Positions 5,590 through 59,490 of a DNA stretch of 64,000 nt are shown here, piece by piece. The stretch is taken from NCBI RefSeq assembly GCF_016432865.1, contig NC_067400.1, forward strand, positions 556,698,001-556,762,000, given 5' to 3'. The notes beneath the pieces were generated by a model that saw nothing but the letters and a program-made list of their open reading frames with translations, ran no database searches and was not told where the DNA came from. The first letter of the stretch is position 1. Each line of letters starts with the position of its first letter. The position numbers were made by a program, and so were the translations under genes. This DNA is from Antechinus flavipes. Lineage: Eukaryota.

Positions 5590-6534
5590 TCAATGTTTCC
5601 CCAAAGAGACCACCTTGAGGATGGCTCGACGGATTTGCTGGGTCTTGACACTGTAGATCACAGGGTTCATCAAGGGTGGGAAGAGCACTGAGACTGTGCC
5701 CATCAGCACATGCACAACGGGAGAAGCATGGCGCCCAAAGCGGTGAACAATGGACAAGCCGAGCACAGGCACATAGAAGCACAGCACGGCCAGGATGTGG
5801 GACACACATGTGTTAAGGGCTTTGAGTCTCTCCTTGGCAGAGGCGATGGAGAGCACGGTGCAGAGGATAATGGTGTAGGAGACCAGGATAAAGAGCACAT
5901 CAGAGCCCATGGCCAACATGATAATGCACAGACCATAGATGCTATTGAAGCGTGTGTCAGAACAGGAAAGCCGGATCATGTCCTGATGTAAGCAATAAGC
6001 ATGAGAGAGGGCCCCCGGGCGGCAGTACTGGAAAGTGAAGAGGCGGAGCGAGGGGGCTGCTGTGATAACAGCACTCCTCAAACCCAGCACTGCCCCAGCC
6101 AGGGCCACGCGGGGGCCAGAGAGGATGCTGGAATAGCGCAGTGGGAAGCGAATGGCCACCAGGCGGTCCAGGGCCATGGCAAAAAGGACAGCAGACTCCA
6201 TAAAGGAGAAGGAATGGAGGAAATGCTGCTGGAGAATGCAGGACACCAGCCCAATGGCCCGCGCATCAAACCACAGCACACCCAGCACGGTGGGCAGAGT
6301 CGACATGCACAGACCCAAGTCTGTCACTGCCAGAATCGCCAGGAAGTAGTACATGGGCTGGTGCAGGGAGTTCTCAGTGCGCACCAGGTGGAGGATGGTG
6401 ATGTTGCCCAGGACAGCCACAAGGTAGCCTGCAAAGATGGGCAGAGAGATCCAGCAGTGAGCCCACTCCAGACCTGGGAAACCAGTCAGCATAAAGGTGG
6501 TAAAGCTGAAATTGGTCCTGGGCAGGTTAGGCAT
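5590..6534 (-). CDS. Class I olfactory receptor, OR51 family, intact main exon (314 aa from ATG 6534); possible upstream coding exon
   Basis: LHQPMYYFL, MALDRLVAIRFPLRY, SHAYCLHQD, KALNTCVSH, HRFG, PPLMNPVIYSVKT; N-glycosylation NFS. The ORF-track start at 6558 is TTG; the first in-frame ATG is 6534. Confidence 0.95.
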   Translation of the reverse strand: MPNLPRTNFSFTTFMLTGFPGLEWAHCWISLPIFAGYLVAVLGNITILHLVRTENSLHQPMYYFLAILAVTDLGLCMSTLPTVLGVLWFDARAIGLVSCILQQHFLHSFSFMESAVLFAMALDRLVAIRFPLRYSSILSGPRVALAGAVLGLRSAVITAAPSLRLFTFQYCRPGALSHAYCLHQDMIRLSCSDTRFNSIYGLCIIMLAMGSDVLFILVSYTIILCTVLSIASAKERLKALNTCVSHILAVLCFYVPVLGLSIVHRFGRHASPVVHVLMGTVSVLFPPLMNPVIYSVKTQQIRRAILKVVSLGKH

Positions 6535-17359: not shown

Positions 17360-18298
17360 TCATTTTAGTTGTACCATGAGTTTAATAATCGCCCGGCGTA
17401 TCTCCTTGGTCTTGATACTATAGATGATGGGGTTGAGCATCGGAGGCACGAATAGGTAGATGTTAGCCATAAGGAGGTGAACAACAGGTGAAGCATGTTT
17501 TCCAAAACGGTGTACTAAAGACAGCCCCACCATGGGCACAAAGAAGATCAACACAGCACTGAGATGTGAGGTGCATGTCTGGAAGGCCCGTAGTTGCTCT
17601 TCTCGGGAAGCCAGACCCATCACAGTGTGCAGAATGAGTGCATAAGACAAGGCTATGAAAACCAAGTCAAGAACCACAGTGAATATCACCAATGTCAGCC
17701 CATACAGATTGTTAAAGGTAGTGTCTGCACAGGCCAGGCGGATCACATCTTGGTGTAGACAAAAAGAGTGAGAGAGGATTCTCCTTCCACAGTATGGAAA
17801 TTTTTGCAGGAGGAGGACAATGGGGAGTAGAGCCACAGGACCCCTGAGAATAATGGCAAGTCCAGCCCGAGTCACTCTCTGGCCTGTAACAATGACTGAG
17901 TACCGCAATGGACGACAGATGGCCACAAAACGGTCAAATGACATGACAAGGAGCACAGCAGACTCCATGAAGGAGAAGGAATGGATACAAAACATCTGGA
18001 ACTGGCAGGTACCGAAATAGATGTCCTGGGAACCAAACCAGAAGGTGACTAGTGTGGTAGGCAGTGTGGATACTGAGAGGCCAAGGTCATTTAGGGCCAG
18101 CAGTGAGAGGAGGTAGTACATGGGGGTATGAAGTTGAGTGTTTGTCTTAATGATGAACAGGATGAAGCAGTTGCCCAAGATGGCCAGCAAATACATAAGA
18201 CAGAAGGGGATAAGGATCCAATGTTGAATGGCCTCCAAACCAGGGAAACCAATGAGATAGAAAGTAGGGCGGAAATGGGTAACATTGATTGGGGACAT
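17360..18298 (-). CDS. OR51M1: Olfactory receptor 51M1 orthologue, intact (312 aa)
   Basis: Diagnostic stretches match recalled human OR51M1: [83 protein letters not shown]. Confidence 0.9.
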
Positions 18299-21952: not shown

Positions 21953-23512
21953 GGGAAGACAAAGAAAGACACAAATCAGTCTCTGCCCTTGAGAGGTTCA
22001 TAATCACAGAGTTAAGAAGTGGTAGAGCAGGGGATCAAGTTCAAGTCCTTTGCTTTCCAATTCAGTGTATTTTCCACTCTTCCTGAAAGTCATATATCCC
22101 TTCCCCAGCTTCTGTCCCTCCCCATCCTTACAGCATCATGACATGAATAATCAGAACAGATCTGAATTATGAAACACTCACAGGCTGCTCTCCAAGTGAC
22201 CAAGTTTGTGTCCTACTGGCTCTTACTGCAGGATGAAATCAGCAGTCAGACAACAGAAAGTAGAGGCATTGAGAGGACATGTTCCATTGTCTGTTCTGGG
22301 TATATTTATCCTCCTCCTTTTTCTATCCTCAGGGAAAACTCAGGCCTCAGGTGCTGGAAGCTGAGTACAGAATCCCAGAGATAACCCCAACATCAACCTT
22401 CCCTACTCTTCCCATTTCATTTTCTTTCTCTCACTTCCCTCCCCCTTTCTCTCCCTCCTTCCTCATAATCTCCCTACTTTCCCCCTCTACTCTGACTTTT
22501 AATCTGTTTTACTCTTCCTTTTTCATCCTCACCCCCAGGTTATTTTATAGACTCAGAGTTCAGTCCCTGATATTCTATGGTGTATCCATCAATGTCTCTT
22601 TTATAACCTTGCCTACTGAGGACTACCAATGTCAGCTTCCCTTATTCCTGATCTGATTTCATCTTCTCTCCTTTCCACTATACCATGGGAACCTGTGTCT
22701 AGAGATTTTCATTTCTTCTATGCTTGGGGCCCAGAACTACACTGCCCTATCCTTACACCCATACAAAAGACCAGGAACAATATTAGTCTCACACCCACTT
22801 TCAACTTCTTAATTTTTTTCTGTAATAAACTAATGTTTAGAAACCCATCAATAACCAAACTGCCATGAGCAACACTGGTAGCCTTAATTATCAAGTAAGA
22901 CCTCCTAACAATTAAAACTCATTTATTGATATTTCTTTATTTATTTCTATTACAAGCCAGTGCTAAGGCACAGTACTAAGTGCAAGAAAGACAAAAACAC
23001 ACAAAAAGTAGTCTCTGCCCTCAAGGATCTTACAATCTAATGAGGAAATAGCATGTAAATACATACAAAGCAAATTATATTCAAGACAAATAAGAAATAC
23101 TTAACAGAAGAAAGATTTGAATTAAGGGGGCATGGGGAAGGCTTTCTAGAAGAGATGGAATTTTAATTGGGACTTAAAAGCAATTAAGGAAGTCTGTAGA
23201 CAGAGCAGAGAAGGGACAGCAGTCTGAGCATAAGAGAAAGTCAAAGAAAATCCCCAGAGCCAATAAATGAAGTGTGTATTTTGTGGAACACTCAAAAAGC
23301 CAGTGTTTCTGGATGGAAGAGTATATGTCAGGGAATAATAACTTGAGGCAGGCAGATTCACCAGCAGGTTATTATAATTGCCTACACATGGGGCAATGAG
23401 GGCCTGTGAACAGTGGTAGAGTCAGAGGATAGGAGGTGGTAGTATATAAGTTTAGAAGGAGACCCCAAGAAGTTGAGGTCACAGTTCGGTATCTTGGGAT
23501 GCCTCGAAAGAA

Positions 23513-24689: not shown

Positions 24690-25800
24690 TTTATCATTAA
24701 ATGATGGCAGGCACCAAAAGCTGGGATTTGGCCATGTGAAGAATTCACATCGGCCATTCTGTTTGGCAAAGGGTAGATTTATTTAGCAGAATAGGATACA
24801 GACAAAATGAAGGGATACAATAGATATCAGGAATGGTAAATATGAAATAGAGTCAATAAATAAAGTGTGAAACACAAGTATCCCATGAAATTGGGGCATG
24901 CTCTTAGTTGGCAGGCTAAATTCTGAAAGGGACTTAGCACCCTAAAAAAGTTAGTTAGCTGTAAGGAGAAGTAGAACTAAGAAGCATAGTGGAGTTAGGG
25001 GAGATAACACAGGGGATGGGGGGAGGAAGGGCAGCGAAGCGGGGATAAGGAGAAATACACCAGGAAGGTAGTGACAAAACCAGGGGTCATAAGTTATTTT
25101 ATAGGGAAAATTTAGTCTCAGAGTTTTGACTTATCTTGGATTTCCAATTGGATTACCTTTAGAACAGGGGACCAAAGAACTAAAATGACTTTCTATTATC
25201 AGAACTTTCTTATTGCTTGCTAATGGGATTAATTTTTATCAATTTCTTTGCTAACCACACCTAATTTTGAAGACCTCATCATTTTCTCCTCTTTTAATAT
25301 TTAATTTCCTTTCTCTGAAACAAAGTTTGTGCCTCTTTGGAATCTGGCATATGTTTCGGAGACGATGGGCTTTCTGGTTCTCAGATTATCTCTAGGTCTA
25401 GGAAAAACTAAGCTGCCTTTTGTCCATTTGTGCATTATACCATTTGTTTTCTCTGAATCCTAACTGAAACCATTTGCCTTTAAATAAGTATGTTATTCAG
25501 GAATACGTGGCCATTCTGAAATTTTTCTCTCTGTGCCAATAGTATATAGAGAGCACTAATAAGATAGTTTCAATCTAAAGGTTGTCAAACCTATTTTTCC
25601 AAGAGGGGATAACTGTTCTTAGATCTTTTCTGAGGTTGAGTTTATCATTATATACTTCCCTATTAGGAAGGATCACCTTCCAAAACTATTTAGTAAATTG
25701 GATAGTGTAAGAAAAGAACAGTAAAGTTTTCCAGCCTCACACAAATCCATAATTTGCATGGGCAATGCTGAACGTGATTGTGTGGGTTGAAAAAACTAAA
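24690..25800 (-). mobile_element. Probable ERV LTR/internal sequence
   Basis: Minus-strand TATAAAA (~25100) and AATAAA (~24780) in LTR order; inserted next to an L2 fragment (24340-24660); ends not resolved. Confidence 0.4.
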
Positions 25801-26920
25801 AGAATTTTTTCATCTCAAGTCAAATAGCATACCAAAATCAGGGAGTGGGAAATGGTAACTCAAAACAGAAATAGAGTTTAAATGACAGAATTTAATATAA
25901 TTAATAATAATAATAATAATAGCCTTTGTGTAACAACCAAGATTTGCAAAATGCTTTACAAATATTATCCTTATTTTATTGTCATAATAACTATTATTAT
26001 TAACATTTTTACAGATAAGCAAGTTAAGGCAGAGATTATGTGATTTATTTTCTTAATATCACATAGTTTAGAAGTGTCTAATTTTAACTCAGATCTTCCT
26101 GACTCCAGATCCAATTCTCTTTCTACTGTGTCACTAGCAAATTTGAAGAGGCATTAAAGGTCAATCAGCCCTATGTCCTCATTTTTTTTTTAAAAGTAAG
26201 GAGTAAGTGATAAATTCAAGATCTGAAATCAGGAAGGATTCTGGTTATATGGCAGAATAGGTTGGTAAATTTCAAGCTGTCCAGATTTCCCCCTCAAATA
26301 AAACAAATTTGTTCCTCAGAACAAAAAAACTGGAACAAAATCAAGAAGACTTGGGGAAGAACTATTGTCCTCCTGATACAATCAGAGACCGATCTGGGAC
26401 TGTGATTAAACTGTCTAAATTCCAAATACCCTCAAGCTAGCTCAGCAGAATCATCAAGTGGAATTATTTACAAGAAAGTAAAGAAAAAATGGACATTCGT
26501 GAATATAATTTCTTCTACTAATATATATATATTATATATATACACATATATATATAATATATATATATATTTTTCTTGATCTGGTAATTTGTTGTTATAC
26601 ATTTTGAATCATCCCTGATTTCTACTGGGTACATGACAATATTCTATTTTGTTTTGTATTTGGTTTTGGTTTTATTTTTTTCTTACTCTTTTTTCAAATA
26701 AAAATGGAATCCCCCCCAAAACAAACAAACAAACAAAAACCACAAGATCTGAAATAAGGTCTTCTGATTTCAAATGCATCAGCTTCTTAGAATATCCTAA
26801 ATGTTTCTCTGGCTGACTATGAGTCAAAAAAAAGAAAAAGGAAAAAAGAAGAAGCTTTCAAACAGTCCCTGATGCTATGAATTGAGATTATCTTTGCCTG
26901 CTCAGAATTCACTGAGTAAC

Positions 26921-26951
26921 TGCATTTCAAAGCGTCGCCAGCAGGTGGCAG
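26921..26951 (+). promoter_or_regulatory. CTCF binding motif with upstream (ZF9-11) module
   Basis: TGCATTTCA-AAGCG-TCGCCAGCAGGTGGCAG; the core is a perfect CCASYAGRKGGCRS match and the upstream module sits at the canonical 5-bp spacing; two retained CpGs. Confidence 0.75.
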
Positions 26952-27229
26952 GAGAAAGCAGAAGATGGCAGATAGCTCATAAGAAGATGCTACTTATCAG
27001 AAATCTCACCAGGTGAGAATAGAGGAAGAGAATCAGGTGACCATAGCAAGAACAATAGCACAACATTGAATATGATTGAATGGTATCACCAGACCAACAG
27101 ATAACAATAGCGACACAAATAGCAGCATCAGGCAAGGAGAGAGAATTGTGTATGGATACCACTCTATTGTTATTTGCCTTATGCTCAATGCTATCCCAGT
27201 TCTTCTAAGCAACTAACAATTTAGGTATT

Positions 27230-27420
27230 AGTGAACCCCCTTCAGTCACTTAAAATATTGTTTCCTCAGTTTCCTCAAATGTAAATGGAGATAATAAGGA
27301 CACCCATTTTGCAGAGTTGTTCTGCGAAGCAAATGAGACAAAAATTGTAAAGCACTTAGTACAGTGACTGGTATATAGTAAGCACTATATAAATGTTAGC
27401 TAGTATTATTATTATGTCAT
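27230..27420 (+). mobile_element. MIR/CORE-SINE
   Basis: CTCAGTTTCCTCAAATGTAAATGGAG...AAATGAGACAAAAATTGTAAAGCACTTAGTACAGTG. Confidence 0.75.
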
Positions 27421-30770: not shown

Positions 30771-33279
30771 GAATGGATTTCTAAGCCCAAAAGCTCTTTA
30801 GGAAGGAACTTTCCTATCTGTCTCCCTCTTTACCTTTGAGAGCCCCTGGCAAAAGCCCAGGCATAAATTCTGCAAAGCATGGAAGGTACTTTTGATGCTT
30901 TTCAGATGCTTGTTCTTAGAAATTTTATTCTTCAATTTTCAGGTTTAATCTAAGGCAACCAGATTTCCTTCTTGTGGAACTGTGAACCTGTGTTCTTCTG
31001 CCCATATAACTAAATTTCATTCCTATTCCTTGTAACAGGAACATCAAGGGAATATGAAGATGGCATAGGATTTACGCTATCTCACAAAAATCATCACACA
31101 GAAAGTAACTGTCTGAGGTGGAATTAAAATTCAGGTTCTCCTGATTCTAGATCCAGTGCTACTGTCCACTGCTGATCCTATCCATAATACTAAACTGCCA
31201 CTCATTCAGCTCAAAATTTAACTTGCAGCATAGGTTATCCCCAAAGCTCAAAAAAGATACTCTTTTCCATTTAGCTTAACATAAGCCTTTTTGATCCTTG
31301 TTTTCTCCTTTTTTAGCAAGTAACACTGAGTTCTTAGCTAGTCACTGAGCCTATCTATACAAATACCGGCAGTCATAAAGAATGCATGGATGTAGGTGAT
31401 GGACAAAGGAGAAGGGAGTTCACCCCACAGGGATACAAAGGAGTTTTGATAGGTGTTAGAGAAAAGAGAGAAGCCCTGCCTGCCTAGAACAGAAATCCAA
31501 GCCTCACACGAATTCCTCACACTGTAAGTTCTCCCTTCCCTTTAGGGAATGCTCATCTATCTCACTCTACTTTCTTGTGGGTAATAATTGACAATGCAGT
31601 TGATTCCAGCTATTCCCCTATTTTTACTTCATTAGGAAAAGGAAATAAATTATAATAGATTACCCATGAATTCCTTGATCAGTGAAACAGCCTTTACTTT
31701 TGAGGAATTCTCTATCTATGAGAGGAAACTAGGGGAATTGGTCCCCAAACCTGGTGAATCCGAGTCTATGGAGAAATTATATATTTTTTTAAAAATGCAG
31801 TTGCATTTTCTTTAAAGTATTTTAAAATGTACTTTCTGGGAAAAGTATTTTTTCTAAAAGATAAGCAAATTTGGGAATTAACTAGAGTTTTTCAGAGCTT
31901 ATCTAGATGACTTTGTGAAGAGAGTTCTGGGTGAGTGCAAATACAGTCTCAAATATTTATTAGCTGTAGGCAAAAGAGAAAGAAATGATAAACCACTCAG
32001 GTTTCTTTGCCAGGAAAATTCCATGGATAGGATGGGGTCAGGACACAACTAAGTGACTGAACCACAATAAAAGGAATGAATTCTATGGAAATTTAAAATT
32101 GCCTAGGAGGAAAGGGGGAAACTAGGGGATTTCTCCTTTAACAGATAAAATCAGATCTTTCATAGGATCAGAAAAATTCTTCTCCTGATTGGAAAAATAT
32201 ACACACACATATCTGTCTGTCTTTCTATCTATCTATCTATCTATCTATCATCTATTTATCTACATACATACATTTTAAAGTATTTGACCCAAACTCAAAA
32301 TAATCAGTATTGCTAATAACCATTTTAAAAGATAACAATCCTTTCTTTTATCCATTTAAATTCAGTCATATGGATCAAACAGTCACTAACAGAAAATTAA
32401 TTCACCAATGAATATTTTAGAACTGATTGGGTAGATAGACAAATGAAGCACTTGAGGTTTTAAGTGGAGATAATAAGGAGATAACAATGCTCTTTTGGGA
32501 GACAGACAGATCAAAAGGTGAATTGAAATATCCTGAAAGTGTGATAAAAGATAGTCTGATACTAAGATCTTATTTCAATAATTCAAAAGATTGGAGATTT
32601 CATCAATGTAGGTATTTCCTCTATTGATGAAAACCCAGATATGCCCTCAGGAGTTATTCTAGACCAAAAAAACACCTCTCAATGAGCTTGCTTTCACTAA
32701 ATTAAGCTAATCTTCAAAAGACAGAAATAATGTGTGTCCTAAGGCAAACATTCTGTATTTTCTTAATTTGGTAAGCCCTGATTCCATTTCACTGGCACAG
32801 TCTTTGGGAACTAAGGGTCATGAATCAGTATGAGTTTTATTTTTAGCCCTGATTGCCTAAAACAAAAATCAGATTAAAAATGATTGATAAATGTTAGTTT
32901 AATAAGGAAGTATTAAAATGTGCCTAAGTATTTATATTTCTCTAAATCACATATAAAATTATACTTTGCCTTAAATCACTAAATATGTAGGACTATTAAA
33001 GATTGAGTCATTTATATATGTACACATATGTACATATATGTGTGTGTATGTATGTACATATATATGCTTTATAAAAAATTGAATTGAAAAATAAATACTT
33101 GGCTTAATTGTACTTTTTGATTCACGTCTTGCAAAAGTTCAACTAGCTGAGCCATGATGTTAAGCCCTAGTACCTCTATTATTTAATTGACTCTTCATGA
33201 TTTACATGCATAATGCTTAAATGTGTTTATCAAACCCCAGATTCCTTCCTGAACACTTCTCAAAGACCTGGCTTTGGGG

Positions 33280-34224
33280 ATGATATTCAACAGTAGTTAC
33301 TTCACTCCAGAGACCTTCTTCCTCACAGGCCTCCCTGGACTGGAGGCTGTCTACCCCTGGCTCGCCATCCCCTTTGGCTCCATGTACTTTGTGGCCCTTG
33401 TTGGCAACAGCCTGATTCTAGTAGTGATCCATGGCAATCCATCCCTCCATCAGCCTATGTATTTGTTCCTGGGTATGCTGGCCTTCTCTGAGCTTGGAGT
33501 CTCCGCCTCCACACTACCCACTGTGATGAGCATCTTTCTCTTTAATGCCAATGAGATCAGCTTCAATGCCTGCTTGTTCCAGATGTTCTCCATCCACTCC
33601 TTCTCTATCATGGAGTCAGCCGTCTTGCTCGCCATGTCTGTAGATCGATTTATAGCCATCTACAGCCCACTGCGCTATACAGCCATCCTAACTCTGCCCC
33701 GCATTGCCCGCACGGGAGTTGCCATTGCACTAAAGAGTGTGGTGGTCATGTTTCCACTGCCATTCCTCCTGAAGCGCCTGCCCTTCTGCGGTCACAATAC
33801 CCTATCCCATTCCTACTGCCTCCATTCAGACCTGATCCAGTTGCCTTGTGGGAATACACGCCCCAATAGCATTCTCGGGCTATGTATTGTCACCTCCACT
33901 TTTGGACTGGACTCATTGCTGATTGTCATTTCTTATGTTCTGATCCTCCATACAGTGCTGGGCATTGCCTCTGGGGAAGGTAGGCGCAAGGCTCTCAACA
34001 CATGTGTGTCGCACATATGTGCTGTGCTTGTGTACTATGTGCCCATGATTGGGGTAGCTATGGTCCATCGCTTTGTGAAACATGCTGCTCCTGCTGTCCG
34101 TCTCCTCCTGGCCAATGTCTATCTCCTGGTCCCCCCTGTAGTCAACCCAATTGTCTACAGCATCAAGACCAAGCAGATCCGTCATGGATTGGTCCAGATC
34201 CTGCTCCAGAAAAAATGTTCATGA
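33280..34224 (+). CDS. Class I olfactory receptor, OR51 family (OR51J-related), intact (314 aa)
   Basis: LHQPMYLFL, MSVDRFIAIYSPLRY, SHSYCLHSD, KALNTCVSH, HRF, PPVVNPIVYSIKT; the ORF-track start at 33274 is TTG and the first ATG is 33280; stop TGA followed by TAG TAG. Confidence 0.95.
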   Translation: MIFNSSYFTPETFFLTGLPGLEAVYPWLAIPFGSMYFVALVGNSLILVVIHGNPSLHQPMYLFLGMLAFSELGVSASTLPTVMSIFLFNANEISFNACLFQMFSIHSFSIMESAVLLAMSVDRFIAIYSPLRYTAILTLPRIARTGVAIALKSVVVMFPLPFLLKRLPFCGHNTLSHSYCLHSDLIQLPCGNTRPNSILGLCIVTSTFGLDSLLIVISYVLILHTVLGIASGEGRRKALNTCVSHICAVLVYYVPMIGVAMVHRFVKHAAPAVRLLLANVYLLVPPVVNPIVYSIKTKQIRHGLVQILLQKKCS

Positions 34225-42891: not shown

Positions 42892-43848
42892 ATGCAAGGT
42901 CTCAACAACTCCTTCGCATTCACTCCTCAGACCTTCATTCTGGTTGGGATCCCTGGCCTGGAAGCGGAGCACATCAGAATTTCTATTCCCTTCTGCCTGA
43001 TGTACACTATCATCTTCCTGGGTAATGGCATTATTCTCCATGTAATTCGGGTTGACCAAACTCTTCATCAGCCCATGTATCTTTTCTTGGCCATGTTGGC
43101 ATCAGTTGAGCTCGGTGTCACCACGTGTACACTGCCTACTGTCTTGGGCATCTTCCTCTTTGGCAACAATGAAATCAGCTTTGAAGCCTGCCTGTTCCAG
43201 ATGTTCTTTATGCACTCTTTTACCATGATGGAGTCAGGAGTCTTACTGGCCATGTCTGTGGACCGCTTCATAGCCATCTACAACCCACTGTGCTACATGG
43301 CCATCCTGACCCTACCTCGAATTGCCTGCACAGGGATTGCCATTGGGCTAAAGACCTTGGGGCTCATGCTTCCACTGCCCTTACTCTTAAGGCGCTTGCC
43401 TTTCTGTGGGCACAATACTCTGTCCCATTCTTATTGCCTACACTCAGACCTGATCAAGTTGCCTTGTGGAAACACCCGCCCAAACAGCATCCTGGGGCTC
43501 TTCATTGTCATCTTCACCTTTGGAGTAGACTCAATGCTCATCGTGGTCTCTTATGTACTTATCCTTCGAACAGTGCTGGGCATTGCCTCCAAGGAAGGTC
43601 GATGGAAGGCACTTAACACATGTGTGTCACATATCTGTGCTGTGCTTGCATACTATGTACCCGTGATTAGTCTTTCCGTGTTACATCGTTTCATGCACCC
43701 TATGCCTCCCCTGCTGCAGGTCATGATGGCCAATGCTTACCTCTTATTCCCACCTGTGGTCAACCCAATTGTCTACAGTGTCAAGACCAAAGAAATACGC
43801 CGAGCTATTGTGCAAACACTGTCCAGGAAGAGGGTCACGGTCAGCTAA
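42892..43848 (+). CDS. Class I olfactory receptor, OR51J1-like, intact frame (318 aa)
   Basis: N-terminus TFILVGIPGLEAEH.RISIPF..YTIIFLGNGIILHVIR matches recalled OR51J1; MSVDRF, SHSYCLH, KALNTCVSH, HRF, PPVVNPIVYS. Confidence 0.93.
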   Translation: MQGLNNSFAFTPQTFILVGIPGLEAEHIRISIPFCLMYTIIFLGNGIILHVIRVDQTLHQPMYLFLAMLASVELGVTTCTLPTVLGIFLFGNNEISFEACLFQMFFMHSFTMMESGVLLAMSVDRFIAIYNPLCYMAILTLPRIACTGIAIGLKTLGLMLPLPLLLRRLPFCGHNTLSHSYCLHSDLIKLPCGNTRPNSILGLFIVIFTFGVDSMLIVVSYVLILRTVLGIASKEGRWKALNTCVSHICAVLAYYVPVISLSVLHRFMHPMPPLLQVMMANAYLLFPPVVNPIVYSVKTKEIRRAIVQTLSRKRVTVS

Positions 43849-58512: not shown

Positions 58513-59490
58513 ATGCAAGGTTCCATCATGCAGACTAGTAATAGTTCTGGTCTAATAATGGGGTTCACACCTAAAACATTTATTTTGGCTGGCATCCCTG
58601 GGATGGAGGCTGAACACATCTGGATCTCCATCCCTTTTTGCCTGATGTATGTCATCATATTTCTTGGAAATGGAACCATCCTCCATGTCATCCATATGAA
58701 TCCCACCTTGCACCAGCCCATGTACTTGTTCCTAGCCATGCTGGCTCTTGCTGAGCTTGGTATATCTGCTTCTACACTTCCCACTGTATTGGGAATTTTC
58801 CTTTTTGATGCAACTGAGATCGACTTCAATGTCTGCCTTCTCCAGATGTTCTCTATACATTCCTTCTCCATCATGGAGTCGGGTATCCTATTGGCCATGT
58901 CCATGGACTGCTTTGTGGCCATCTATAGCCCACTGCGCTATACAGTTATATTGACTTTGCCTCGAATCTTTTCAATGGGTGCTACAGTTGGACTCAAGAG
59001 TGTGGTACTCATGGCCCCACTGACTGTCCTACTCCAACGCCTACCTTTCTGTGGACACAATGTTCTCTCCCATTCTTACTGCCTGCACCCCAACCTCGTC
59101 CACCTCCCATGTGCTGATACCTCCATCAACAACATCTATGGACTTTTCATTGTAATTTCCACATTTGGGCTGGACTTCCTACTTATTGTGGTCTCATACA
59201 TGCTCATCCTTTACACAGTATTGAGTATTGCCTCTAGAGAGGGTCGGTGGAAAGCCCTCAATACGTGTGGTTCACATGTCTGTGCTGTACTTGTGTACTA
59301 TGTACCCATGATTGGTCTATCCATGGTGCATCGCTTTGGGCGACATCTCCCCACTTTGGTACAACCTACCATGGCCAATATTTACCTCTTCTTCCCACCT
59401 GTGGTAAATCCAATTGTTTACAGCATCAAGACCAAGGAAATCCGTCGAGGTATTGTTCGTGTATTCACTAAAAAGAGGGTCAGGGGTTAG
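58513..59490 (+). CDS. Class I olfactory receptor, OR51J1-like, open frame (325 aa) with DRF>DCF change
   Basis: TFILAGIPGMEAEHIWISIPF, LHQPMYLFL, MSMDCFVAIYSPLRY, SHSYCLH, KALNTCGSH, HRFG, PPVVNPIVYSIKT. Confidence 0.92.
   Translation: MQGSIMQTSNSSGLIMGFTPKTFILAGIPGMEAEHIWISIPFCLMYVIIFLGNGTILHVIHMNPTLHQPMYLFLAMLALAELGISASTLPTVLGIFLFDATEIDFNVCLLQMFSIHSFSIMESGILLAMSMDCFVAIYSPLRYTVILTLPRIFSMGATVGLKSVVLMAPLTVLLQRLPFCGHNVLSHSYCLHPNLVHLPCADTSINNIYGLFIVISTFGLDFLLIVVSYMLILYTVLSIASREGRWKALNTCGSHVCAVLVYYVPMIGLSMVHRFGRHLPTLVQPTMANIYLFFPPVVNPIVYSIKTKEIRRGIVRVFTKKRVRG

What the first reader, a model, noticed from the sequence alone, without database searches (positions are those of the whole stretch)
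26820..27104. Consensus CTCF site with erythroid motifs upstream of OR51M1: candidate marsupial counterpart of the distal beta-globin domain anchor
Seen: CTCF core CCAGCAGGTGGCAG (26938-26951) with an upstream module TGCATTTCA at 5-bp spacing, the only such full match I found. It is 8.6 kb upstream of, and on the opposite strand to, OR51M1, flanked by WGATAR sites (26888-26893, 26970-26975, 26994-26999, 27099-27104), an AP-1/NF-E2 core TGAGTCA (26820-26826) and a YY1-like AAGATGGC (26962-26969). Established, recalled: the beta-globin locus is embedded in the class I OR cluster, and CTCF-bound mouse HS-62/human HS-111 lie among these ORs near OR51M1 and loop to the LCR/3'HS1 region. Inference: this anchor predates the marsupial-eutherian split, and its forward orientation predicts the globin genes lie to the right of the window.
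Basis: partly seen in the sequence, partly recalled or inferred. Interest (0 to 1): 0.8.

Follow-up and report, generated by a model that had tools for sequence, protein, structure and literature searches.

The report
Conserved CTCF site between marsupial odorant-receptor genes

Summary
CCAGCAGGTGGCAG at 26938-26951 (+) is the only match to the CTCF core in the 64-kb window, even allowing one mismatch. An upstream module (CTGCATTTCA) lies at the usual 5-bp linker.

The stretch is single-copy. In koala the module, the core and the 3' flank are identical while the linker has diverged, and this is the best-kept two-part block in 9.4 kb of intergenic DNA. Tasmanian devil carries one core change.

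The globin reading is not supported:
- Three of the four GATA sites and the AP-1 core are missing in koala and devil.
- There is no NF-E2 extension and no CACCC box.
- Human HS-110 lies between OR51B6 and OR51M1. Here the neighbour upstream of OR51M1 is an OR51I-type gene, followed by a second OR51I-type gene and OR51J1.
- Macaque and pika have no comparable CTCF core within 10 kb upstream of OR51M1. Tree shrew has only weak ones.
- The side on which the globin genes lie could not be determined.

The core lies 14 nt before a short segment that ends in a conserved splice donor. The dunnart RefSeq model uses that segment as the first exon of the OR51I-type gene.

Most likely this is an ordinary CTCF anchor or insulator at that gene's 5' end. 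The scan also noted a second candidate for the same globin-anchor role (s1-196631) about 26.6 kb left of this window.

The parts
26920..26931 (+). Upstream (ZF9-11 type) module of the CTCF site, CTGCATTTCAAA
   Evidence: 12/12 identical in koala and 11/12 in devil, where the only difference is the last base and CTGCATTTCA is intact. It resembles published upstream motifs in 6 of 10 positions (PMC12885311).
26932..26937 (+). Unconserved tail of the linker (GCGTCG, two CpGs). Counted from the 10-nt module, the gap to the core is 26930-26937, i.e. a 5-nt linker plus TCG in place of the usual TGG.
   Evidence: Diverged in koala (4 of 6 bases) and devil (4 of 6), while both flanking modules are kept. 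The linker is known to be non-specific.
26938..26951 (+). CTCF core motif CCAGCAGGTGGCAG, forward orientation
   Evidence: Only match in 64 kb, 0 of 100 shuffles. Identical in koala at L001 676-689, 9.3 kb upstream of koala OR51M1. Devil has CCAGAAGGTGGCAG in two assemblies.
26952..26969 (+). Conserved 3' flank GAGAAAGCAGAAGATGGC, which includes the YY1-like AAGATGGC
   Evidence: 17 of 18 bases identical in koala and 18 of 18 in devil. Together with the core it forms one of only five stretches with at least 29 of 30 identical bases in the Antechinus-koala alignment.
26965..27012 (+). Candidate 5' exon segment of the OR51I-type gene, ending in the splice donor CAG|GTGAGA at 27012|27013
   Evidence: The N-terminus of the dunnart RefSeq protein P0242 (MADG...EISPD) maps here and joins the acceptor at 33264-65. 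The donor is kept in koala and devil. In Antechinus the ATG frame stops after 5 codons, so here it could only be untranslated.
33266..34224 (+). Coding exon of the OR51I-type receptor gene (OR-C). The acceptor AG is at 33264-65 and the ORF was listed from 33274.
   Evidence: It groups with a eutherian OR51I-like clade with support 100/100.
17360..18298 (-). OR51M1 orthologue, head-to-head with OR-C
26850..27190 (.). Single-copy block that holds the site
   Evidence: A local BLAST finds only itself and the koala orthologue. The adjacent 27191-27420 is a MIR-like repeat with 8 further copies in the window.

Best explanation
This is a genuine two-part CTCF-binding site: an upstream module, a non-specific 5-bp linker and the core. 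It is single-copy and at least as old as the split between dasyurids and diprotodonts. It lies in the 15-kb head-to-head gap between OR51M1 and an OR51I-type receptor gene in the class I odorant-receptor cluster of Antechinus flavipes.

CTCF bound here would stall cohesin arriving from the right, because the motif is forward. The site would then act as a loop anchor or insulator at the point where transcription direction switches between the Or51ai2/OR51M1 block and the OR51I/OR51I/OR51J1 block. It sits directly at the 5' end of a candidate first exon of the OR51I-type gene.

Shown: the motif, its anatomy, its orthologous conservation and the gene context. Inferred: occupancy by CTCF, loop or insulator function, and use of the exon in Antechinus.
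For: - The motif is unique in the window and absent from shuffles.
- The architecture matches published two-part sites with a 5-bp linker. Such sites make up 13-15% of CTCF sites and are typical of insulators.
- The koala orthologue has identical module, core and flank but a diverged linker.
- With a mask of 12 scored, 6 unscored and 32 scored bases, it is the single best of 4,296 placements (43 of 44 bases; background identity 77.9%).
- It is one of five 30-mers with at least 29 of 30 identical bases among 4,802.
- It is not part of an interspersed repeat in the 190 kb sampled.
- It has the same strand as OR-C and lies 14 nt upstream of the segment that the dunnart RefSeq model uses as first exon.
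- The OR51M1/OR-C adjacency holds across marsupials, judged from consecutive RefSeq accession numbers.
Against: - There are no binding data.
- The devil carries a C>A change at a preferred C/T position of the core in two assemblies, so constraint is not absolute. Devil-Antechinus conservation of the block is no better than background.
- The conservation mask was chosen after seeing the pattern.
- At least one of the four other 29/30 blocks looked repeat-derived to me by eye, so such blocks may arise without function.
- Odorant-receptor clusters are heterochromatic in most tissues, and that may exclude CTCF.
- No real position-weight matrix (MA0139) was available. Only an IUPAC consensus was scanned.
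Confidence: 0.55

Rival explanations
1. One reading: the site is the marsupial homologue of the CTCF element at human HS-110/111 (mouse HS-62.5/-60.7), the distal anchor of the beta-globin chromatin domain, inherited from the therian ancestor.
For: HS-110 lies between OR51B6 and OR51M1 beside a CTCF site cluster (PMC3857487). The mouse upstream sites interact with HS5 and 3'HS1 in a CTCF-dependent way (PMC2243019). The marsupial site is also upstream of OR51M1 and antiparallel to it, which is the orientation expected from the reverse-oriented human upstream sites (PMC8500713).
Against: - The other flank is an OR51I-type gene, not OR51B6. Gene order around OR51M1 also differs from eutherians: Or51ai2(-), M1(-), I-type(+), I-type(+), J1(+) here, against B6, M1, (Or51ai2, J1), Q1, I1, I2 in eutherians.
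- No CTCF core with one mismatch or fewer, and no similarity to the block, lies within 10 kb upstream of OR51M1 in macaque or pika.
- The erythroid motifs are not conserved.
- Human erythroid anchors are described as two closely spaced sites, and this is a single site.
- Another candidate was noted about 26.6 kb left of the window (s1-196631, unchecked).
Confidence: 0.1
2. The block is conserved because it is the promoter and first (untranslated) exon of the OR51I-type gene, or an E-box element bound by bHLH, ZEB or SNAI factors. On this reading the CTCF-like sequence is incidental and not occupied.
For: - The dunnart RefSeq first exon maps to 26965-27012 with a conserved donor.
- Three CAGGTG boxes on one strand lie within 98 bp, the only such cluster in 64 kb. 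Two of them are kept in koala.
Against: - Conservation peaks over the two CTCF modules, with a diverged linker between them. This is the footprint expected of CTCF rather than of an exon.
- The exon body 26977-27009 is only about 70% identical in koala.
- The Antechinus RefSeq model uses another exon, at about 31032-31106.
- The devil change destroys the first E-box but leaves most of the CTCF core.
- No RNA evidence could be obtained.
Confidence: 0.2
3. The site is a chance motif in neutrally evolving DNA that happens to be preserved between two species, with no function.
For: - Only two informative comparisons exist.
- The devil has already lost one core position.
- At least one of the four other blocks of equal conservation in the same interval looked repeat-derived to me by eye.
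Against: The only CTCF core in 64 kb coincides with the top-ranked two-part conserved block, a fraction of 0.0002 of placements. The composition-based expectation of the motif is about 0.004 per window (my own arithmetic), and it appeared in 0 of 100 shuffles.
Confidence: 0.15

Closest known systems
Two-part (upstream + core) CTCF insulator sites, e.g. the IL3 insulator site and chicken beta-globin 5'HS4 (PMC12885311)
   Same: A core matching CCASYAGRKGGCRS, an upstream module about 10 nt long, and a 5-nt non-specific linker. The modules are conserved but not the linker.
   Different: The upstream module matches the published consensus in only 6 of 10 positions. Neither binding nor enhancer-blocking has been tested.
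Human HS-110/111 and mouse HS-62.5/-60.7 and HS-85.5, the distal CTCF sites of the beta-globin domain
   Same: It lies among class I odorant-receptor genes, upstream of OR51M1 and antiparallel to it.
   Different: The interval is bounded by an OR51I-type gene instead of OR51B6. It is a single site rather than a cluster or pair. No sequence similarity to eutherians was found in the parts available, and the erythroid motifs are not conserved. The position of the globin genes relative to the site is unknown.
Promoter CTCF sites (CSE) of clustered protocadherin variable exons (PMC7087399)
   Same: A forward CTCF motif directly at the 5' end of a candidate first exon of one member of a tandem family of stochastically expressed receptor genes.
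   Different: There is one site, not a promoter-plus-exon pair. No such motif lies in front of the other four receptor genes in the window. Odorant-receptor choice is thought to depend on LHX2, EBF and LDB1 rather than CTCF (my own knowledge).

Membership tests
CTCF-binding site (two-part type) | Match to the core consensus bound by zinc fingers 3-7 | tested here: met
   14 of 14 positions of CCASYAGRKGGCRS match, and the match is unique in 64 kb. The JASPAR matrix itself was not available.
CTCF-binding site (two-part type) | Upstream module 5-6 bp from the 19-mer core | tested here: met
   CTGCATTTCA, then a 5-nt linker, then TCG, then the core. The spacing matches. The match to the module consensus is partial (6 of 10).
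CTCF-binding site (two-part type) | Evolutionary constraint on the modules but not on the linker | tested here: met
   In koala 43 of 44 scored bases are identical while the linker has diverged, the best of 4,296 placements. The devil has one core change.
CTCF-binding site (two-part type) | Occupancy by CTCF and cohesin in vivo | not testable with these tools
   No marsupial ChIP data were within reach.
Beta-globin distal anchor (HS-110/111, HS-62.5) | Lies in the OR51B6-OR51M1 interval, on the globin side of OR51M1 | tested here: not met
   The OR51M1 side is met. The side on which the globins lie is unknown.
Beta-globin distal anchor (HS-110/111, HS-62.5) | Sequence homology with the eutherian element | tested here: inconclusive
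   Nothing above noise was found in the 10 kb upstream of OR51M1 in macaque, tree shrew or pika. However, HS-110 may lie beyond those 10 kb, and 281 bases of the macaque stretch are N.
Beta-globin distal anchor (HS-110/111, HS-62.5) | Erythroid hypersensitive site with GATA1 and NF-E2 input | tested here: not met
   This was tested at motif level only. Three of four GATA motifs and the AP-1 core are lineage-specific, and there is no MARE extension and no CACCC. Chromatin state could not be tested.
Beta-globin distal anchor (HS-110/111, HS-62.5) | CTCF-dependent contact with HS5 and 3'HS1 | not testable with these tools
   This needs Hi-C or 4C in marsupial erythroid cells.
Protocadherin-like promoter CTCF site | CTCF motif at the transcription start of each alternative family member, co-oriented with the gene | tested here: inconclusive
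   The site is co-oriented with and adjacent to a candidate first exon of one gene. The other four receptor genes in the window have no such motif, and the transcription start is not mapped.

The most novel reading that the evidence does not exclude
The CTCF site is part of the promoter of a class I odorant-receptor gene (the OR51I-type gene at 33274-34224). On this reading it lies just upstream of that gene's first exon and helps connect the gene to a distant class I enhancer by directional looping, as CTCF does at protocadherin promoters. That would be a CTCF-dependent route to receptor choice for one conserved receptor gene.
Probability: 0.08. Interest if true: 0.6.

Novelty: new member of a known kind. 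Interest (0 to 1): 0.3.

Why it matters
If the site is bound, it marks a chromatin boundary inside the marsupial class I odorant-receptor cluster that is at least 60 million years old. That makes it a useful landmark for comparing how the receptor and beta-globin neighbourhood is partitioned in marsupials and eutherians.

The larger claim, that the distal globin-domain anchor predates the marsupial-eutherian split, would be of moderate interest to globin and 3D-genome specialists. This work does not support it. The work does show that gene order around OR51M1 differs between the two groups, so position relative to OR51M1 alone cannot establish homology of regulatory elements.

Tried and rejected
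- **Repeat origin.** A local BLAST of 26850-27190 against the window and the loci fetched by then (L001-L005) found only the koala orthologue, while the neighbouring MIR-like element served as a positive control. Repeat origin is rejected for the sample examined.
- **Genome-wide copy number and polymorphism from reads.** The look-up of sequencing runs gave 6 low-coverage contig runs of three organisms.
- **More marsupials.** DNA could not be served for possum, opossum, wallaby, bilby, Gracilinanus or wombat. The Dromiciops locus ends before the site.
- **Eutherian counterpart.** Scans and alignments of the 10 kb upstream of OR51M1 in tree shrew, pika and macaque gave nothing above noise. My first pattern used a linker 2 nt too long. 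The core-plus-flank part would still have scored, and it did not.
- **Direction of the globin genes.** I could not obtain a globin protein id without typing a sequence, so no coordinates could be compared. The scan's notes for this genome list no beta-globin gene. Parsimony from gene order fails because at least two rearrangements separate the marsupial and eutherian orders.
- **Primary papers** on HS-62.5 and on the conserved CTCF sites (PMC1895883, PMC133827) are not held.
- **A real CTCF matrix** was not found in the supplement of PMC9004084.
- **Rfam** found nothing better than E of about 0.9.

Full report
**What is there.** Window 26938-26951 (+) reads CCAGCAGGTGGCAG. It is the only match to the CTCF core consensus CCASYAGRKGGCRS in the 64-kb window, and none appeared in 100 dinucleotide-preserving shuffles. 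No second site appears even when one mismatch is allowed. My own arithmetic from base composition gives about 0.004 expected matches per window. All other coordinates in the finding (TGCATTTCA, four WGATAR, TGAGTCA, AAGATGGC) are correct.

The anatomy is CTGCATTTCA, then a 5-nt linker, then TCG in place of the usual TGG, then the core. This is the commonest two-part CTCF architecture: ZF9-11 bind the upstream module, ZF8 bridges a non-specific linker (usually 5 bp, sometimes 6) and ZF3-7 bind the core. Such sites make up 13-15% of CTCF sites and are typical of insulators and barriers (PMC12885311; PMC9004084). The upstream module matches the published consensus in only 6 of 10 positions.

**Whose genome, and which genes.**
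- The protein encoded at 17360-18298 (-) is in the collection on a 636,717,922-bp contig. A protein named for Antechinus flavipes lies on a contig of the same length.
- That protein is a clear OR51M1 orthologue: 77-82% identical to eutherian proteins named OR51M1, against about 60% or less to proteins named for other OR51 subfamilies.
- The window holds five intact class I receptor genes.
- 5590-6534 (-) is the orthologue of mouse Or51ai2 (85% identity).
- 58513-59490 (+) is the OR51J1 orthologue (76-80% identity).
- In a maximum-likelihood tree, 33274-34224 (+) and 42892-43848 (+) each pair with a different eutherian OR51I-like clade, with supports 100/100 and 98/93.
- The site therefore lies in the 15-kb head-to-head gap between OR51M1 (8.6 kb away) and an OR51I-type gene, 'OR-C' (6.3 kb away, same strand as the motif).

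**Is it a repeat?** No other copy of 26850-27190 exists in the window or in the loci fetched by then (L001-L005), apart from the koala orthologue. The adjoining 27191-27420 is a MIR-like element with eight further copies in the window. One local script alignment made immediately afterwards still contained them, but no alignment reached them. Later scripts leave them out.

**Conservation.**
- *Koala.* The koala OR51M1 locus (L001) aligns collinearly with the Antechinus intergenic region at 72-80% identity. It carries the identical 14-mer on the corresponding strand, 9.3 kb upstream of OR51M1.
- *Base-by-base pattern in koala.* The upstream module is 12/12 identical. The linker has diverged (4 of 6). 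The core is 14/14. The next 18 nt are 17/18.
- *Rank among 30-mers.* Among 4,802 aligned 30-mers, only five regions reach at least 29 of 30 identical bases, and one of them is 26938-26969.
- *Rank with a two-part mask.* With a mask of 12 scored, 6 unscored and 32 scored bases, the site scores 43 of 44 and is the single best of 4,296 placements. I chose this mask after seeing the pattern, and at least one of the other four top 30-mers looked repeat-derived to me by eye. The result is strong but not decisive.
- *Tasmanian devil.* In two assemblies (L006, L007) the module and flank are kept, but the core reads CCAGAAGGTGGCAG. This is a derived C>A at a position that prefers C or T. Devil-Antechinus identity of the block is no better than the 92% background. 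Constraint is therefore real over the long term but not absolute.

**The erythroid motifs.**
- WGATAR occurs 264 times in the window, and 4.4% of 285-bp windows hold four or more.
- The AP-1 core has no NF-E2 extension, and there is no CACCC box.
- The GATA sites at 26888, 26970 and 26994 are absent in both koala and devil.
- The TGAGTCA region is replaced by an (AG)n run in koala.
- Only the GATA site at 27099 and the AAGATGGC are shared.
- Nothing in the sequence points to an erythroid enhancer.

**Relation to the beta-globin anchors.** HS-110 lies 110 kb upstream of HBE1, between OR51B6 and OR51M1, next to a CTCF site cluster (PMC3857487). [quoted passage not shown] In human erythroid cells the upstream anchors are two closely spaced reverse sites, convergent with 3'HS1 (PMC8500713).

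Three things weaken the proposed homology.
1. *The interval is not the same.*
   - Human order is HBE1, OR51B4, B2, B5, B6, M1, Q1, I1, I2, OR52D1 (table in PMC3484066).
   - In pika, OR51J1 follows OR51M1 on the same strand; in tree shrew the Or51ai2 orthologue does.
   - In Antechinus the order is Or51ai2(-), M1(-), site, I-type(+), I-type(+), J1(+).
   - OR51M1 and OR-C carry consecutive RefSeq accession numbers in Gracilinanus, Dromiciops, Petaurus, Notamacropus and Sminthopsis, so this adjacency holds across marsupials.
   - By my own reasoning, at least two rearrangements separate the marsupial and eutherian orders.
2. *No counterpart was found in eutherians.* The 10 kb upstream of OR51M1 holds no CTCF core with one mismatch or fewer in macaque (281 bases are N there) or in pika. 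Tree shrew has only two 1-mismatch cores, and nothing resembling the conserved block scores above noise. This does not exclude homology, because HS-110 may lie further than 10 kb from OR51M1.
3. *The side of the globin genes could not be established.* The genes to the right of the site are of types that in human lie beyond OR51M1 as seen from the globins. An unchecked note of this scan also places 'OR51B' genes, with tandem CTCF motifs between them, to the left of the window (s1-196648, s1-196631). Both lean against 'globins to the right', but with a rearranged order neither is proof.

**An unexpected context.**
- The core lies 14 nt upstream of an ATG (26965).
- It lies 61 nt upstream of a consensus splice donor, CAG|GTGAGA (27012|27013), which is kept in koala and devil.
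- The RefSeq protein of the dunnart orthologue of OR-C (P0242, 334 aa) begins with MADG...EISPD. This maps to the orthologue of 26965-27012 and joins the acceptor AG at 33264-65.
- In Antechinus that reading frame stops after five codons, so the segment could only be untranslated here.
- The Antechinus RefSeq model (P0367) instead uses an exon at about 31032-31106.
- The site may therefore sit at the 5' end of a first exon of the OR51I-type gene, co-oriented with it. No RNA data could be consulted.
- The same 100 bp holds three CAGGTG boxes on one strand, the only such cluster in the window. One is inside the CTCF core and one is the splice donor.

**Verdict.** The most likely reading (0.55) is a functional two-part CTCF site. 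It would act as a loop anchor or insulator at the strand switch between two receptor-gene blocks, at the 5' end of the OR51I-type gene. The rivals:
- The block is conserved as an exon, promoter or E-box element without CTCF binding (0.2).
- It is a chance motif in neutrally evolving DNA (0.15).

It is a new member of a known kind of element and is of modest interest.

Noticed in passing
window 5590-59490: Gene order and strands are Or51ai2(-), OR51M1(-), OR51I-type(+), OR51I-type(+), OR51J1(+). This differs from the eutherian order (OR51B6, M1, Or51ai2/J1, Q1, I1, I2). By my reasoning at least two rearrangements separate marsupials from eutherians around OR51M1.
   Followed up: partly
window 26942-27039: Three CAGGTG E-boxes on the + strand lie within 98 bp, the only such cluster in 64 kb (27 boxes in all). 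The first is inside the CTCF core and the second doubles as a splice donor.
   Followed up: partly
window 26965-27012, 31032-31106 and 33264-33265: RefSeq models of the same OR51I-type gene use different upstream exons in dunnart (orthologue of 26965-27012) and in Antechinus (about 31032-31106). Both join the acceptor just before the coding exon.
   Followed up: partly
L006:240-253 and L007:296-309: Tasmanian devil carries a C>A change at core position 5 (CCAGAAGGTGGCAG) in two independent assemblies. This is a natural weakened variant that could be used in binding tests.
   Followed up: partly
L001:790-850: Koala has a long (AG)n microsatellite where Antechinus has the A-rich tract and the TGAGTCA.
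   Followed up: no
L003:1375-2358 (tree shrew): The gene 7.6 kb upstream of tree shrew OR51M1, on the opposite strand, is closest to proteins named OR51Q1 in sauropsids (64-65% identity). That does not fit the human order, so either this old scaffold is misjoined or the locus is rearranged.
   Followed up: no
wombat OR51M1 gene model P0125 (no DNA served): The wombat RefSeq OR51M1 model is 430 aa and spans 8,080 bp, so it includes coding exon(s) about 7 kb upstream of the main exon. This may be an annotation artefact.
   Followed up: no
window 27191-27420: A MIR-like SINE lies directly right of the single-copy block.
   Followed up: no
window 25388-25417, 25816-25845 and 22406-22438: Three further 30-mers with at least 29 of 30 bases identical between Antechinus and koala lie in the same intergenic region. 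Their nature is unknown.
   Followed up: no
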